Shown piece by piece: positions 9,684-43,600 of a DNA stretch of 64,000 bases (its first letter is position 1; the number at the start of each line of letters is the position of its first letter). The position numbers were made by a program, and so were the translations under genes. Source of the stretch: Pavona decussata (Eukaryota); assembly GCA_977016875.1 (NCBI GenBank), contig CDRNST010000196.1:558001-622000 (forward strand). The letters run 5' to 3'. The notes under the pieces are model-generated. The model searched no databases and had not been told where the DNA came from. It saw only the letters and a program-made list of their open reading frames with translations.

Positions 9684-12600
9684 CAGACAGTTCCAATTCA
9701 GCTTATGCAGGCTTACATGGAGGCTACAGCTGTAACAAAACTTACTAATTGCTTAACATATGACCAACTAATTAAGTAACATATGACTAAATAACTAAAT
9801 TAATGAAATATGAATAATTACAAATGTTCTAATCTTTTGAACTACTGGTCGCTACATTCACATCTAAATCTACTGGCTATATATAAAAATGCAGACTTAG
9901 ACCCTTCTTAAGTTTTCAAACGGATGCTTCCTTCTAAGGTAGCTGGGTAATTCATTCCACGTTTTAGCCTCGTTGTATTTCGATACGGCCTTTGCAGGGG
10001 CAGACAGAGAAGATCCTTATTTTGAGTGTTTCTAAGAGTGGGAATCGCACGAGTAGTGAAAATCATGCGAGAGGTAACCAGACGCAAGGCCATTAACTCT
10101 ATGCAGACCGGGCTTTTTCTGTCCTTTCGGACTGGGGGGGCGGGGGAGGAAGGAGCTTCCGTCCCCCCGCCCCCCAAAAAATCACAGCTATAAAGATGTT
10201 CCTTTGACGTCTGCAACGGGAAGCGATGAAGTCACATGACGTGTTTCTCATGTCATACTTGGATTTGGATTTCTGGATTTCCTCAAAACGTCAGGAAAGC
10301 AACAGAAGTAAGCAAAAAGTAATCAAAACCAATAAAGGAACACTAATTTAAGCTAAAAACATAGAAGCTAAAGTAGGAGATGTAAATTTACTTTATTTTA
10401 AAAAGGGATTTTCTATTAAAAAAAACTGCCGGTAAAAAAAACGGTTGCCATGGTTACATCAAAGTCAATGAGCACTTACCGAGCACATAAAAGTTTTTTT
10501 CAGACAAATTTCTGGAAAAAAGTCCTGATTTTTTATGTCCTTTTCTCAGAATTCAAAAAACCGTTATCAGGTTCAAAGCCGCCGCGCGTAGAACCTCCCG
10601 CCACCGGTCTAGATAGGGTCGAGGCAGTTGAAGATCTGAAGGTAAATTTCGTATTACCTGCGACATTCTAATGATGTCCAACTGAGAAAACATTGTATTC
10701 TCTAGAACAAAATTCGCGGTCTCGCCACTGACTTTCGAGCACAGCCAGAGTGCCACAGTTTCGAATGAGAAAGTGTTAGGTTAATTTTTTTAAAAGTTAT
10801 TTCATATTCGTTACCTCTCTGCCAAAAGAGGTTGATGCAATAGTTATTAGCGATAATGATAAGCGACAAAAAAAAATTATAGTAAAATAAAAAATAAACA
10901 AATAAAAATAATTATTAGCGAAATCTATTGCTGGATAAAAATTGAATATGACGATTACATTTTATGCAAAGTCGCCAGTCTTATTACAAATCTATTTAAA
11001 GTCCCGTATGATACAAGGTGTTGTCCCTAAAACTATTAACCCACATGCCTAACAGGGTTAAATATTCAGGAATATTCAATTTGACTTAATCTTCCTAGAT
11101 TGTGGGACATCAGAGGATATCCCCTTATGGCTTGGATACTTGAAACTTTTATAATTTATCTCCAGCGCTTCACTGGATATCGAAAGGCACAAGTGGCGTA
11201 TACCCAGTGACTCGTAAGCTTTACTTCTGAATGCTATGTTAACCAGAAAATTTTACTTATAAGTATTAAATAAATATATTTAATAAATACTCGGCAACTA
11301 CCTTTAGAAATGACTATAACTGCAGTTAGTTTTAATGACCTCTCACTTACGACTGATTTCACAAATGGGGCGGATAGATGTGTTGCAGGGAACGTCATGC
11401 CATTTTTTCCCAGCCTTGGTTGTAACACAATCTTGATTGCCTCTCCAGTTGTTAGGTTGGTTGCTGTCCCAGTTTGTGTAATTAGTGAGTGATCCGTCAA
11501 TCCAAAGCCATTTGGAGCTGTTCGTCGGATCCCTGTGCAAAGCAATCCACGCCGAATCTTTAATTTTTGAGGAAACTGCCGCTACTTTGGCTTGTGAATT
11601 CAAAATTGCAAGGCTTGTTCCTAATGCTACGCAGAAGGATTTAGCAGCGTTCCATCCCATTGCCTTGTTAAACATTTTAAAGCATGATCCATGGAAACCC
11701 GGAAGCCAGCCCGTTGGGCAAAGGGCTACAAGGAAATGTAAGAATAAAATATGTAAATGCATACACATTACAACACAATGCGTGCAATGCGACGCCACGT
11801 CATGCCATGCAATGCAATACAATGCAATGCAATGGTGGCTTGAGATGTTCAGGAGACTACAAGAGTGAGAGATACAAAGCTGGAATATCCAGAGTTGTTT
11901 TTTTTAAACTAGCCAAGTTCGATATAAACGTTCTACCCGTTAACTAAAATGGATGGTAAACGGTGAAAGATAAACAGAATGTTTATCGCAGTTTCACCGG
12001 AATCCGGGGCCTGCTTGTCGTAGGAAATGACGCGCATTACAATGTAGAGTGCGGGGACGATTATCGCGTGTTCATCTGTACAGCCTTAGCTCTAATTAGT
12101 TTAGCAAGCAAGCAAGCATGCGCGCAATAGTCTACTGCCAGCGATAGTCTACCAGCTTTATGGAAATTAAGGGACTCATAACTTTTTTGTGATAGCGTGT
12201 ACTTCACATGATGAACCTGAAGCGCTTTGCCGCCGAGTTGATTGCCTAAATTTACGAAAACATGCTACTTTTGTCTTTCGTGACCGAAGCCATGTTGCTA
12301 AATGATCTGAAAAATAGGCATGTGTCCGGTAGAAATGGATGCAAAGTAAATTATTTTCTTGCCATTTATTCACTTTCCATGGGACTATATGATACGCTTA
12401 TGTTGTATTTTCCTTTTTTTCTGTCTGCGAGATAGGCTGCTGCAACGCTTCATGTTGACGAGTCTCGCGAAATAGAGACAGAACTTGAAGATTGTCGAAA
12501 TTAGGCAAGTTCACATAGCTATAAAAATTCCATGAAGAACGAGCCGCAAAGTTTCGTTCTTTAGTGACAATTTCTATGGTTCCTATGTTACAGTTTCCTT

Positions 12601-40680: not shown

Positions 40681-43600
40681 TAATAAAATAAAAATACACA
40701 AATAAAAATAATTATTAGCGAAATCTATTGCTGGATGAAAATTGAATATGACAATTACATTTTATGCAAAGTGACCAGTCTTATTACAAATCTATTTAAA
40801 GTCCCGTATGATGCAAGGTGTTGTCGCTAAAACTATTAACCCACATGCCTAACAGGGTTAAATATTCAGGAATATTCAATCTGACGACTTAATCTTCCTA
40901 GACTGTAGGGCATCAGAGGATATCCCCTTATGGCTTGGATACTTGAAACTTTTATAATTTATCTCCAGCGCTTCAACGGATATCGAAAGACATAAGTGGC
41001 GTATACCCTGTGACTTGTAAGCTTTACTGGTGAATGATTACTAATTAAGTTTAACAGAAAATAATACTAAGTGGGAACTAAATATATTTAATAAATACTC
41101 GGAAATTGAAAACAACTACCTTTAGAAATGACTATAACTGTAGTTAGTTTTAATGACCTCTCACTTACGACTTTTTTCACAAATGGGGAGGAAAGTTAGG
41201 TTGCAGCGAATGTCATGCCATTTCCCAAATTTGGTTGCAACACAATCTTGAATGCCTCTCCAGTTGTTAGGTTGGTTGCTGTCCCAGTTTGTGTAATTAG
41301 TGAGTGATCCGTCAATCCAAAGCCATTTGGAGCCGTCCGTCGGATCCCTGTGCAAAGCAATCCACGACCAATATTTAATTTTTGAGGAAACTGCTGCTAC
41401 TTTGGCTTGTGAATTCAAAATTGCAAGGTTTGCTCCTAATGCTACGCAGAAGGATTTAGCAGCGTTCCATCCCATTGACTTGTGAAAAATTTTAAAGCAA
41501 GATCCATGGAAACCCGGAAACCAGCCCGTTGGGCAAAGGGCTGCAAGGAAATGTAAAAATAAAATAAGTAAATGCAATACACAATACAACACAATGCGTG
41601 CAATGCGACGCCACGTCATGCCATGCAATGCCATGCAATGGTGGCTTGAGATGTTCAGGAGACTACAAGAGTGAGAGATACAAAGCTGGAATATTCAGAG
41701 TTGTTTTTTAAACTAGCCAAGCTCGATATAAACGTTCTACCCGTTAACTAAAATGGATGGTAGACGGTGAAAGATAAACAGAATGTTTATCGCAGTTTAG
41801 AATCCGGGGCCCGCTTGTCGTAGGAAATGATGCGCATTACAATGTAGAGTGCGGGGACGATTAGCGCGTGTTCATTTGTACAGCCTTAGCTCTAATTAGT
41901 TTAGCAAGCAGGCAAGCTACTGCCAGCGATAGTCTACCAGCTTTATGGAAATTAAGGGACTCATAACTTTTTTGTTATAACGTGTACTTCACATTGTAAA
42001 CCTGAGGCGCTTTAACGCCGAGTTGATTGCCTAAATTTACGAAAACATCGCTGCTTTTTTCTTTAAAGACCGAAGCCATGTTGCTAAATGATCTGATAAA
42101 TAGGCATGTGTCCCGTAGAAATGGATGCAAAGTAAATTATTTTCTTGTCATTTATTCGCTTTCCATGGGACTATATGATACGTTTATGTTGTATTTTCCT
42201 TTATTTCTGATGGTTTTAGATCTGTCTGCGAGATAGGTTGCTGCAACACTTCATGTTGAAGAGTCTCTCGAAATAGGGACAGAACTTGAAGATTGTCGAA
42301 ATTAGGCAAGTTCACATAGCTATAAAAATTCCATGAAGAACGAGCCGCAAATTTTCGTTCTTTAGTGACAATTTTTATGGTTCCTATGTTACAGTTTCCT
42401 TGGTCTGGTTAAAAATCACCGCCTCGCTTGATTTCAAGTTGAGCTATTTTTGATTGTTTGATCATTCGGTTCGATAATGGTGTCGTTAAAATCTCGCTGT
42501 TGGCTTGATTCAAGCTCAATGTTTAAAAACGTCGCTTTGATAAATTAAAAAGATGTAATATAACTGCCTGTGGTGTTTGTTTGTTATAGCGCGAGCTTGT
42601 AAGTTCTTGTTAAATTGATCAATAAAAGTTGCGCTCAATTTAAGCCTCGACATAAGCCCTCCTCCCCCTGACTTGTTCGCGCTCGGCGCTTTTTTTCTTC
42701 CCCGAGAAATAATATTCAATTCCGACCTCAAATAGAAGGCAACTCTATAATCTAGAATCCACTGTACAGGAAAGTTAACCATGCGTGAATTCCTTTGAAG
42801 TTTTTGGTTTATTTTACTGTCTTATCATGTTTTACTTGTTATTTAACTTCCCAAACTGAGTTAGATTGCAAGATTATTCTCCATAAGAATCCAATGCTTT
42901 TTGGGAACGTGACGACAATCTGAACTGAATTATTTTCCCTGTTGCTGTCTGTCATTGGTTTGTTGAAGCATATTCCCAGTAGCCTTTTGTAGGCATCCAG
43001 GTAGAGTAGCCTCCCTCGCTAGCCCTTTTTAGTGTCCTCAGGCAACGCTTCTCCTCACAAACGGCTGCTCACATTCGAACCACACTCCTTTCCCACTGTT
43101 TTTTGCAGTCAATTAAGGGGGGCAATCATGTATCAGCAAGGCGAGAATGACGTACGTTTTCGCGCGAAAAAATGACAACTGGACTTCCGCCAGATCGTAA
43201 GACTGGTTTTTACCAGTTTTTCTATTGCGGACAAAGCCGAAACACCGACAAAAGTAGTGGACGAAAGCTCAAAGTGTTTCGTGTGTTCTTCGCCCACAGC
43301 TGCTAATGAAAGAGTATTTATTCTCGGGAATAGTGCGCATAATTTTGTTGAAATTATCAATTGTTCGTTAGAGTTCGCCATCAGCTGCTATACCAGCAGC
43401 AAGTTGTGTTTATCTGCAAGGCGATGTGTTACAAGTGACAGCTCAAGTTTCAGCGCGCAACTGAAAAGGAAGAAGAACTTGGTCGAAATTCGCGACTCAT
43501 GAAGTTTTTCATGAAGTGAAGTTTTTAATACTTTATTTTTATATTGTAATACTGAAGATTTTACGTTAGATAAATAAATAATAAAAAAAAAGGTAGGCCA

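What the first reader, a model, noticed from the sequence alone, without database searches (positions are those of the whole stretch)
11351..41540. Lectin exons differ almost only by amino-acid replacements (diversifying-selection signature)
A by-eye codon alignment of CTL1 (11351-11725) with CTL2 (41169-41540) gives 21 replacement codons, 3 silent codons and one codon indel in 124 codons. Changes cluster just before WIAL (DSA vs YWS) and after the QPN loop (NQDCVTTKAGKKWHDVPCNTSIR vs IQDCVATKFG-KWHDIRCNLTFL), the ligand-binding face of CTLs, while all Cys and Trp are kept. A spot-checked intron stretch (10201-10440 vs ~39953-40192) showed about 9 mismatches in 240 nt, lower than the exon (~27/372).
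Basis: partly seen in the sequence, partly recalled or inferred. Interest (0 to 1): 0.7.

Follow-up and report, generated by a model that had tools for sequence, protein, structure and literature searches.

The report
Fast-evolving duplicated lectin exons
Three copies of one C-type-lectin exon sit in a mosaic gene of what is probably a coral-like animal, and the copies differ mostly by amino-acid changes, which points to adaptive change in one duplicated copy; this is a familiar pattern for immune-type lectins.

Summary
The count is right: CTL1 (11351-11725) and CTL2 (41169-41540), both on the minus strand, differ at 21 replacement codons, 3 silent codons and one codon indel.

All three are internal phase 1-1 exons with intact splice sites. 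CTL1 is followed by single Sushi, discoidin and laminin-G-like exons. CTL2 and CTL3 copy only the lectin exon, intron on both sides and upstream sequence.

The pair alone does not show dN/dS above 1 (ML 2.24, p=0.17). Other tests favour selection:
- Polarised changes are lopsided, 17 on the CTL2/3 lineage and 7 on CTL1.
- The CTL2 branch has omega 6.3 (p=0.03 against 1).
- Its replacement rate is three times that of the flanking intron (p=0.0015).
- Differences avoid columns invariant in other paralogues (p=0.0025).
- Eleven exon copies reject M1a for M2a (p=3e-7; 16% of codons at omega 4).

No conversion donor was found. Only about half the changes flank the canonical sugar site. The family lacks the full calcium-ligand set, so sugar binding is unproven.

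Verdict: real, partly supported, and a new member of a known kind.

The parts
11351..11725 (-). CTL1: a C-type lectin-like domain exon of 375 nt, phase 1-1. It is the copy that lies directly upstream of the rest of the gene.
   Evidence: Pfam Lectin_C E=4.4e-19. The acceptor is ttccttgtag| and the donor is |gtaagtgagagg. The AF2 model has pLDDT 92. Foldseek gives TM 0.83-0.86 to solved CRDs.
41169..41540 (-). CTL2: a duplicated lectin exon of 372 nt, phase 1-1, carrying 17 of the 27 polarised differences.
   Evidence: Pfam Lectin_C E=1.5e-16. Splice sites are intact. The same protein is encoded in an independent assembly, at loci L003 and L004.
53930..54301 (-). CTL3: a third copy of the exon, identical to CTL2 at 372 of 372 bases.
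   Evidence: Found by tblastn. It matches independent-assembly locus L002.
9518..13695 (-). Duplicated block A: CTL1 with its flanking intron sequence.
   Evidence: Self-BLAST and MAFFT alignment with blocks B and C.
38433..43495 (-). Duplicated block B: CTL2 with flanking intron and upstream sequence. It has no Sushi, discoidin or laminin-G exon of its own.
   Evidence: Self-BLAST shows 97.5% identity to block C and about 92-95% to block A. tblastn finds the downstream exons only once in the window.
51229..55824 (-). Duplicated block C: CTL3 with flanking sequence. It has no downstream exons of its own.
7600..7803 (-). Sushi (CCP) exon, 204 nt. It starts and ends in phase 1, so the frame continues from the CTLD exon.
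   Evidence: tblastn with the L005 Sushi ORF. Splice sites were read. Omega is 0.25-0.42 against L008, L005 and L010.
6947..7269 (-). Discoidin (F5/8 type C) exon. The acceptor is in phase 1. The limits are approximate.
   Evidence: tblastn gives 85-89% amino-acid identity to the L008 and L010 F5_F8_type_C ORFs. Splice sites were read. Omega is 0.22-0.34.
5348..5847 (-). A conserved coding segment with no Pfam call. It may be the rest of the discoidin domain. The limits are approximate.
   Evidence: tblastn to L008 13338-13820 gives 64-74% identity.
4032..4598 (-). Laminin_G_3 / pentraxin-like (ConA-like) open frame holding the exon. It is fast-evolving.
   Evidence: Pfam Laminin_G_3 E=6e-15. 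tblastn to the L008 and L010 LamG ORFs. Omega is 0.90-0.99.
12190..12345 (-). A conserved element of about 155 nt upstream of CTL1. Copies lie at 41977-42131 and 54747-54903, and upstream of every same-species CTLD exon. No conserved reading frame. Function unknown.
   Evidence: Alignment A2. BLAST finds it only upstream of CTLD exons in the window, L001, L005, L008 and L011.

Best explanation
**What it is.** The window holds one mosaic extracellular gene on the minus strand. Its exon order is lectin-like domain (CTL1), Sushi, discoidin, an unassigned segment and a laminin-G-like domain, most likely from an anthozoan cnidarian.

Segmental duplication has copied the lectin exon, with intron on both sides and several kilobases of upstream sequence, twice more further upstream (CTL2 and CTL3). 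Transposon insertions now separate the units.

**What is shown.**
- All three exons keep their splice sites, their length in whole codons and phase 1-1.
- The lectin domain family evolves under diversifying selection at about one codon in six.
- After the CTL1 / CTL2-3 split, the CTL2/3 copy took 16 replacements and a one-codon deletion against one silent change.
- That rate is faster than its own flanking introns, and the changes fall mainly at positions that also vary among other paralogues.
- CTL1 changed at about the intron rate.

**What is inferred.**
- The CTL2/3 exon encodes a domain with altered binding specificity, fixed by positive selection. This is neofunctionalisation of a duplicated recognition module.
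- CTL2 and CTL3 reach the protein either as extra tandem domains or as alternative exons spliced to the shared downstream exons.
- Because the canonical calcium ligands are incomplete, the ligand may not be a sugar bound in the classical way.
For: **Structure of the locus**
- Three exon copies with intact splice sites and phase.
- Gene order and single-copy downstream exons.
- The same order occurs in paralogue L008 and in L010.
- Splice phases match from CTLD to Sushi to discoidin.

**The gene is functional**
- The Sushi and discoidin exons have omega 0.22-0.42.

**Selection in the family**
- M1a against M2a gives LRT 30.4, p=2.6e-7.
- It is robust: p=0.006 and 1e-4 in the two halves, 4e-7 without gap columns, and 2e-5 without CTL1/2.
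- My M0 likelihood equals that of iqtree, which validates the code.

**Selection on the lineage**
- Exon changes polarise as 17 derived in CTL2/3, 7 derived in CTL1 and 3 ambiguous.
- On the CTL2/3 lineage the exon rate is 4.6% against 1.8% for intron (p=0.006). Replacements are 16 of 293 sites against the intron rate (p=0.0015).
- The CTL2 branch has omega 6.3, p=0.030 against 1, or p=0.008 with multi-nucleotide codons removed.
- The branch-site test gives p=0.041.
- For the pair, dN against all noncoding divergence gives p=0.011.

**Constraint is still acting**
- 18 differences fall in family-variable columns and 4 in invariant ones (p=0.0025).
- The probability of no stop and all 14 Cys/Trp kept under 27 random substitutions is 0.016.
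Against:
- I chose the CTL2-only branch test after seeing the asymmetry. Its p-values of 0.03 and 0.008 would weaken under correction for the four branch tests run.
- If substitutions are counted as events, collapsing adjacent changes, exon against intron is only p=0.055.
- Intron divergence is patchy, and mosaic similarity among the units shows that gene conversion is active here. The intron may therefore not share the exon's history.
- The site-model test used 11 paralogous sequences of about 125 codons and my own implementation. Recombination among paralogues can inflate such tests.
- No transcript evidence shows that CTL2 or CTL3 is spliced into any mRNA. They lack downstream exons of their own.
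- No signal-peptide exon was found.
- The calcium and sugar ligand set is incomplete, with QPN, Gln in place of Glu, and WHD.
Confidence: 0.6

Rival explanations
1. Relaxed constraint. CTL2 and CTL3 are redundant or unused pseudo-exons in partial gene duplicates, drifting neutrally. Most random changes are replacements, so a 21:3 ratio needs no positive selection.
For: - The pairwise omega cannot be told from 1.
- CTL2 and CTL3 have no Sushi, discoidin or laminin-G exons of their own.
- The canonical calcium ligands are degraded in all three copies.
- The probability of no stop under 27 random substitutions is still 0.27.
Against: - Neutral drift cannot exceed the neutral rate. The CTL2/3 replacement rate is about three times the flanking intron rate (p=0.0015, or 0.010 on the conservative count).
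- The CTL2 branch omega is 6.3, above 1 (p=0.03; p=0.008).
- Differences avoid family-invariant columns (p=0.0025) and all Cys and shared Trp (p=0.016).
- The only indel is in frame, while the flanks carry 24 indel events in 3.7 kb.
- Splice sites are intact.
Confidence: 0.2
2. Gene conversion. A tract from a more distant, unsampled paralogue overwrote the CTL2/3 or CTL1 exon. This would raise exon divergence above that of the introns without any selection on this lineage.
For: - Conversion is clearly active in the cluster.
- CTL2 and CTL3 are identical, while their aligned flanks differ by about 1.3% (42 of 3,309 bases).
- Divergence varies block by block.
- Unit C is closer to unit A than unit B is across 12046-12630.
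- Many paralogues exist on the same contig.
Against: - Most derived states are unique. Of the 24 polarised exon changes, 6 occur in any of the 8 other copies, scattered over four different copies with no contiguous match to one donor.
- Searches of the 5.8-billion-protein collection, which holds this species' assembly, find nothing closer than 82% with CTL1 as query. With CTL2 as query, nothing is closer than 74% apart from CTL2's own ORF.
- The 16:1 replacement-to-silent ratio on the CTL2/3 lineage is unlike ordinary paralogue differences, where median omega is 0.65 and dS is about 0.2.
Confidence: 0.08
3. Assembly or consensus error in a repeated region created false differences.
For: - The region is repetitive and contains two N gaps.
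- CTL1 could not be confirmed in an independent assembly.
Against: - The CTL2/CTL3 protein is encoded identically at three places of an independent assembly. Their flanks differ from the window by 0.3-0.7%.
- 17 of the 27 differences are CTL2/3-derived.
- Errors would not preserve frame, Cys, Trp and splice sites.
Confidence: 0.02

Closest known systems
Rapidly evolving immune-type C-type lectin paralogues. Examples from my own knowledge are the coral lectin millectin of Acropora millepora, snake-venom C-type lectin-like proteins and the primate CD209/CLEC4M cluster. For coral lectins under positive selection, compare tachylectin-2 (PMC2880987).
   Same: - Tandemly duplicated lectin domains.
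- An excess of replacements, concentrated partly in the loops around the sugar site.
- Conserved Cys/Trp scaffold.
- Likely anthozoan host. The closest named proteins are from Montipora, Stylophora and Dendronephthya.
- The cnidarian-immunity review PMC7563517 describes millectin as a pattern-recognition lectin.
   Different: - Here the unit that duplicated is a single exon inside a mosaic gene, not a whole gene.
- The motif set is QPN, Q/E and WHD rather than EPN or QPD with WND.
- The acceleration is on one lineage only.
- Identity to any named protein is at most 41%.
Mannose-receptor family and other multi-CTLD proteins. These include Endo180/MRC2 CRD2, DEC-205, PLA2R and FcRY, and anthozoan 'macrophage mannose receptor-like' proteins.
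   Same: - Best sequence and structure matches: PDB 9wyt, 7jpt and 5ao5, and Foldseek 9qy1 at TM 0.83 and 33% identity.
- Long-form CTLD with the extra N-terminal disulfide.
- Tandem CTLDs are common in the anthozoan relatives.
   Different: - No fibronectin-II or ricin domain.
- The partner domains here are Sushi, discoidin and laminin-G-like.
- Whether the three exons are joined in one protein is unknown.
- The linker between joined domains would be only about five residues.
Arrays of alternative variable exons spliced to constant exons, such as Dscam exon clusters and the protocadherin and UGT1A clusters. This comparison rests on my own knowledge and is a functional analogy only.
   Same: - Several homologous exons of the same phase lie in tandem upstream of single-copy downstream exons.
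- Each is preceded by the same conserved noncoding element.
- The arrangement recurs in a second gene of the same contig (L001/L011).
   Different: - There are only three copies, two of them identical.
- There is no evidence of mutually exclusive use.
- No docking or selector pairing was tested.
- The exons have acceptor sites, unlike protocadherin variable exons.

Membership tests
C-type lectin-like domain (Pfam PF00059, CTLD fold) | Profile match above the curated threshold. | tested here: met
   Lectin_C scores 69.6 bits (CTL1) and 61.5 bits (CTL2 and CTL3) against a cut-off of 22.6.
C-type lectin-like domain (Pfam PF00059, CTLD fold) | Four core cysteines plus the two long-form N-terminal cysteines, and a WIGL-type beta2 motif. 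| tested here: met
   C2, C14, C31, C99, C113 and C121 are invariant across 13 sequences. WIAL is present.
C-type lectin-like domain (Pfam PF00059, CTLD fold) | Double-loop alpha/beta fold. | tested here: met
   The AF2 model has pLDDT 92 and pTM 0.86. Foldseek gives TM 0.81-0.86 to solved CRDs.
Calcium-dependent carbohydrate-recognition domain (a functional C-type lectin) | EPN or QPD tripeptide at calcium site 2. | tested here: inconclusive
   The copies have QPN, a hybrid of the two canonical motifs. The named anthozoan relatives have EPN.
Calcium-dependent carbohydrate-recognition domain (a functional C-type lectin) | WND motif, and the Glu ligand between the two motifs. | tested here: not met
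   The whole family has WHD. The Glu is replaced by Gln in CTL1, CTL2 and CTL3 but kept in the other paralogues.
Calcium-dependent carbohydrate-recognition domain (a functional C-type lectin) | Measured sugar binding that depends on calcium. | not testable with these tools
   This needs recombinant protein and glycan arrays with and without EDTA.
Gene under positive or diversifying selection | Pairwise dN/dS significantly above 1 for CTL1 against CTL2. | tested here: not met
   Omega is 1.8-2.24, with p=0.16-0.27.
Gene under positive or diversifying selection | A class of codons with omega above 1 across paralogues. | tested here: met
   M2a against M1a gives p=2.6e-7, with 16% of codons at omega 4.0.
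Gene under positive or diversifying selection | Replacement rate above the local neutral (intron) rate on a defined lineage. | tested here: met
   On the CTL2/3 lineage, 16 of 293 replacement sites changed against 18 of 994 intron sites (p=0.0015, conservative 0.010). The branch omega is 6.3 (p=0.03). The lineage was chosen post hoc.
Gene under positive or diversifying selection | An excess of fixed over polymorphic replacements (McDonald-Kreitman test). | not testable with these tools
   Only one other assembly of the species was available, and its CTL2/3 exons are identical.
Alternative or cassette exon array | Homologous exons of equal phase in tandem, upstream of shared exons. | tested here: met
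Alternative or cassette exon array | Differential inclusion of the exons in transcripts. | not testable with these tools
   No transcript data were available. The protein collection holds only unspliced ORF calls for this family.

The most novel reading that the evidence does not exclude
The three lectin exons, and the similar triplet in the neighbouring L001/L011 gene, could form a small array of alternative cassette exons. Each is preceded by the same conserved element of about 155 nt, and each could be spliced singly to the constant Sushi, discoidin and laminin-G exons. One cnidarian gene would then make receptors with different recognition heads, with selection diversifying the heads. My evidence does not exclude this. 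It also does not distinguish it from serial inclusion or from non-use.
Probability: 0.12. Interest if true: 0.7.

Novelty: new member of a known kind. Interest (0 to 1): 0.4.

Why it matters
If CTL2/3 is a used exon, this is a clean, recent example of how a recognition module gains a new specificity. The route is exon-level duplication inside a mosaic gene, followed by a burst of replacements in one copy.

It comes from an animal group, probably Anthozoa, where lectins are thought to mediate symbiont and pathogen recognition. It also gives concrete residues to test, from the site-model list.

It does not change the general picture. Fast-evolving duplicated lectins are already well documented.

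Tried and rejected
1. **Terminal exon.** I first read the exon as terminal, ending in SRK-stop. I rejected this as the main model because the stop lies inside a GTAAGTGAGAGG donor conserved in all 12 copies. The phase also matches the Sushi exon.

2. **First exon with its own signal peptide.** The in-frame upstream stretch is hydrophobic and has an ATG in CTL2/3, L001b/c, L006 and L009. It lacks an equivalently placed ATG in CTL1, L005, L007 and L008 (CTL1 has only a short in-frame MCMH start). 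It is built from a (CATTG)n microsatellite and the polypyrimidine tract, which cannot give stops. Left open.

3. **The 155-nt upstream element as an exon.** Its length varies by 1 and 5 nt, and no frame or phase is conserved.

4. **Signal-peptide exon scan.** I scanned the upstream regions collinear with L008. There were no candidates under my criteria.

5. **Cross-sample coding exons upstream of the CTLD.** tblastx of the L008 upstream region against the other loci found nothing convincing, only nucleotide-level or low-complexity matches.

6. **Representative protein search for a spliced full-length relative.** The list was dominated by multi-CTLD proteins at about 30% identity, and no close spliced relative appeared.

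7. **Independent confirmation of CTL1.** An exact look-up found nothing on record.

8. **Rfam scan of the window.** No matches.

9. **Three-dimensional distance test of the changed sites.** Not possible, because the tool does not return model coordinates.

Full report
**1. The observation**

Both stretches are on the minus strand. The first two bases finish a split codon and the last base starts one.

Each exon is preceded by a polypyrimidine tract and YAG, and followed by GTAAGTGAGAGG. The apparent stop after SRK is part of that donor.

All three copies match Pfam Lectin_C.
- 124 codons
- 21 replacement codons
- 3 silent codons
- one codon indel
- 27 nucleotide differences

The intron spot check is also exact, with 9 mismatches in 240 nt.

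A third copy, CTL3 at 53930-54301, was missed. It is identical to CTL2 at every base.

**2. What is there**

The window is not human. The closest named proteins are anthozoan (Montipora foliosa, Stylophora pistillata, Dendronephthya gigantea), at no more than 41% identity.

The window matches contigs of the ENA assembly ERZ25073751 at 99.3-99.7%. It is therefore the same species in another assembly or haplotype.

Downstream of CTL1 on the same strand lie single copies of the following:
- a Sushi exon
- a discoidin exon
- an unassigned conserved segment
- a laminin-G-like exon

A paralogous locus of the same assembly (L008) has the same order. So does a locus from another sample (L010).

The splice phases fit. 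The CTLD exon ends in phase 1. The Sushi exon starts and ends in phase 1. The discoidin exon starts in phase 1.

I searched the model exon by exon, by reference. I did not build or search a joined protein.

CTL2 and CTL3 have no downstream exons of their own. Blocks B (38433-43495) and C (51229-55824) copy only the lectin exon, about 0.6-2.8 kb of downstream intron and the upstream region. Transposon ORFs fill the gaps between units.

A second gene on the same contig (L001/L011) also has three lectin exons ahead of the Sushi-side intron.

All 12 exon copies examined keep the splice sites and a length divisible by three.

**3. Is the pair more than chance?**

Not on its own.

| Test | Result |
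|---|---|
| NG86 | dN 0.085, dS 0.047, omega 1.8 |
| Other estimators | omega 1.8-2.2 |
| Fisher / binomial | p=0.27 / p=0.16 |
| GY94 pairwise ML | omega 2.24, LRT against 1 = 1.92, p=0.17 |
| Same model, omega fixed at 0.65 | LRT about 5 |

The pair is therefore faster than the family median of 0.65. It cannot be told from neutrality.

**4. Wider tests**

I wrote a GY94-F3x4 likelihood program. Its M0 likelihood equals that of iqtree (-1730.04), which validates it.

*Family level.* On 11 exon copies, M1a against M2a gives LRT 30.4 (p=2.6e-7), with 16% of codons at omega 4.0. The result holds under four checks:
- each half of the alignment with its own tree (p=0.006 and 1e-4)
- gap-adjacent columns removed (p=4e-7)
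- CTL1 and CTL2 removed (p=2e-5)

*Same-gene controls.* Against L008, L005 and L010:

| Exon | Omega |
|---|---|
| Sushi | 0.25-0.42 |
| Discoidin | 0.22-0.34 |
| Lectin (CTLD) | 0.5-0.9 |
| Laminin-G-like | 0.9-1.0 |

The gene is therefore functional, and its putative recognition domains are the fast parts.

*Lineage level.* Polarising each difference with eight other copies gives the following:

| Region | CTL2/3-derived | CTL1-derived | Ambiguous |
|---|---|---|---|
| Exon (372 nt) | 17 | 7 | 3 |
| Flanking intron (994 nt) | 18 | 27 | 5 |

- The CTL2/3 exon rate is 4.6% against 1.8% for intron (p=0.006).
- Its replacements alone are 16 of 293 sites against the intron rate (p=0.0015, or 0.010 if all ambiguous intron sites are given to that lineage).
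- CTL1 runs at the intron rate.

*Branch models.*
- The CTL2 branch has omega 6.3 (p=0.030 against 1). CTL1 has 1.18, not significant.
- Removing the codons hit by adjacent multi-nucleotide changes leaves p=0.008.
- With both branches as foreground, omega is 2.65, with p=0.079 against 1.
- The branch-site test gives p=0.041.

*Caveats on these tests.* The CTL2-only test was chosen after seeing the asymmetry. Counting clustered changes as single events weakens exon against intron to p=0.055.

**5. Constraint is still visible**

- Of the 22 changed residues, 18 fall in columns that vary among eight other paralogues. Only 4 fall in the 58 invariant columns (p=0.0025).
- Under 27 random substitutions, the chance of no stop with all 14 Cys/Trp kept is 0.016.
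- The only exon indel is in frame, whereas the flanks carry 24 indel events in 3.7 kb.

This argues against plain pseudo-exon decay.

**6.

*Consensus error.* The CTL2/3 protein is encoded identically at three places of the independent assembly. CTL1 could not be confirmed this way.

*Conversion from a distant paralogue.*
- Most derived states are unique. Six of the 24 polarised exon changes recur in some other copy, scattered over four copies with no contiguous match to one donor.
- Word searches of the 5.8-billion-protein collection return the same nine proteins with CTL1 or CTL2 as query. Nothing is closer than 82% to CTL1. Nothing is closer than 74% to CTL2 apart from CTL2's own ORF.
- Those searches see only proteins of 0.55 to 1.75 times the query length.
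- Conversion is nevertheless active among the units. CTL2 and CTL3 are identical, divergence is block-wise, and similarity upstream is mosaic. An unsampled donor cannot be excluded.

**7. Where the changes lie**

The AlphaFold model is confident (pLDDT 92). It gives beta1 at 14-17, alpha1 at 24-33, alpha2 at 44-49, beta2 at 58-64, beta3 at 99-103, beta4 at 106-108 and beta5 at 117-123. It superposes on solved CRDs at TM 0.81-0.86.

- Eleven of the 22 differences lie in the last 29 residues (p=0.006, a post-hoc test). These are next to the QPN loop, in the beta3-beta4 turn, right after WHD, and in the beta4-beta5 loop.
- From established knowledge of mannose-binding protein, the residue after WND contacts the sugar. 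That column has the highest posterior of all (0.999).
- The other half lie at positions 7, 17, 19, 21, 36, 37 and 56-58, plus 123 at the C-terminal end. By the standard CTLD topology these belong to the lower lobe, away from calcium site 2.
- I could not measure distances, because model coordinates are not returned.

The family has QPN, Glu and WHD where its named anthozoan relatives have EPN, Glu and WND. CTL1-3 share a further Glu-to-Gln change. Classical calcium-dependent sugar binding is therefore doubtful.

**8. Comparison and verdict**

This is a long-form CTLD. Its nearest sequence and fold matches are mannose-receptor-family CRDs. The behaviour resembles other fast-evolving immune lectins, including coral examples in the literature.

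The unusual points are modest:
- The duplicated unit is an exon inside a mosaic gene.
- The burst is confined to one copy.

Whether CTL2 and CTL3 are used, in series or as alternatives, is open.

**9.

- The N runs at 44141-44433 and 57111-57256 were left as they are.

Noticed in passing
window 311-1078(+), 16788-17696(+), 22251-23576(+), 49133-50038(+): Transposon-type ORFs lie between and beside the lectin units. They are a hAT dimerisation domain, a PIF/Harbinger DDE_Tnp_4, a Pox_A32-like packaging ATPase (possibly Maverick/Polinton-like) and a reverse transcriptase.
   Followed up: partly
window 44141-44433 and 57111-57256: The two N runs sit at equivalent places in duplicated units B and C, between the stretches collinear with L008 positions about 7896 and 7237. 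This looks like repeat-related assembly gaps. I did not fill them.
   Followed up: no
window 11730-11830, 41545-41640, 54306-54400 (minus strand): A (CATTG)n microsatellite and the polypyrimidine tract lie just 5' of each lectin exon. Read in frame, they give a hydrophobic stretch that looks like a signal peptide. An ATG is present in CTL2/3 but not in CTL1. ORF callers therefore extend the protein through the intron.
   Followed up: partly
window 12190-12345, 41977-42131, 54747-54903 (minus strand): An element of about 155 nt lies roughly 140-470 nt upstream of every same-species lectin exon, about 440-470 nt in the window. It is 83-96% identical among copies, at or above the identity of the exons it precedes. 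It has no conserved frame. It is absent from the loci of sample ERZ26692694.
   Followed up: partly
window 11190-11270: A cluster of 13 substitutions specific to unit A, plus indels, lies in an AT-rich stretch of the intron just 3' of CTL1. It produces a local 14% divergence peak.
   Followed up: no
window 12046-12630 against 41846-42431 and 54607-55203: Here unit C is closer to unit A (21 mismatches) than unit B is (35). Elsewhere B and C are near-identical. This mosaic pattern suggests gene conversion among the units.
   Followed up: no
window 4032-4598 (minus strand): The laminin-G-like exon evolves almost neutrally against its paralogue and its relative in another sample (omega 0.90-0.99). 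The Sushi and discoidin exons of the same gene are constrained. It may be a second fast-evolving recognition domain.
   Followed up: partly
window 28692-32672, 34393-37546, 44815-47346, 57618-61640, 62244-64000: The upstream region collinear with L008 1-7237 is repeated five times, twice as partial units that have no lectin exon. Its content is unknown, and I found no coding exon in it.
   Followed up: partly
L001 10074-10451, 11423-11800, 19224-19601; L011 4001-5670: A neighbouring gene on the same contig has three nearly identical lectin exons (98-99.5% identity). Two are only 1.3 kb apart, and a DIRS-like retroelement separates them from the third.
   Followed up: partly
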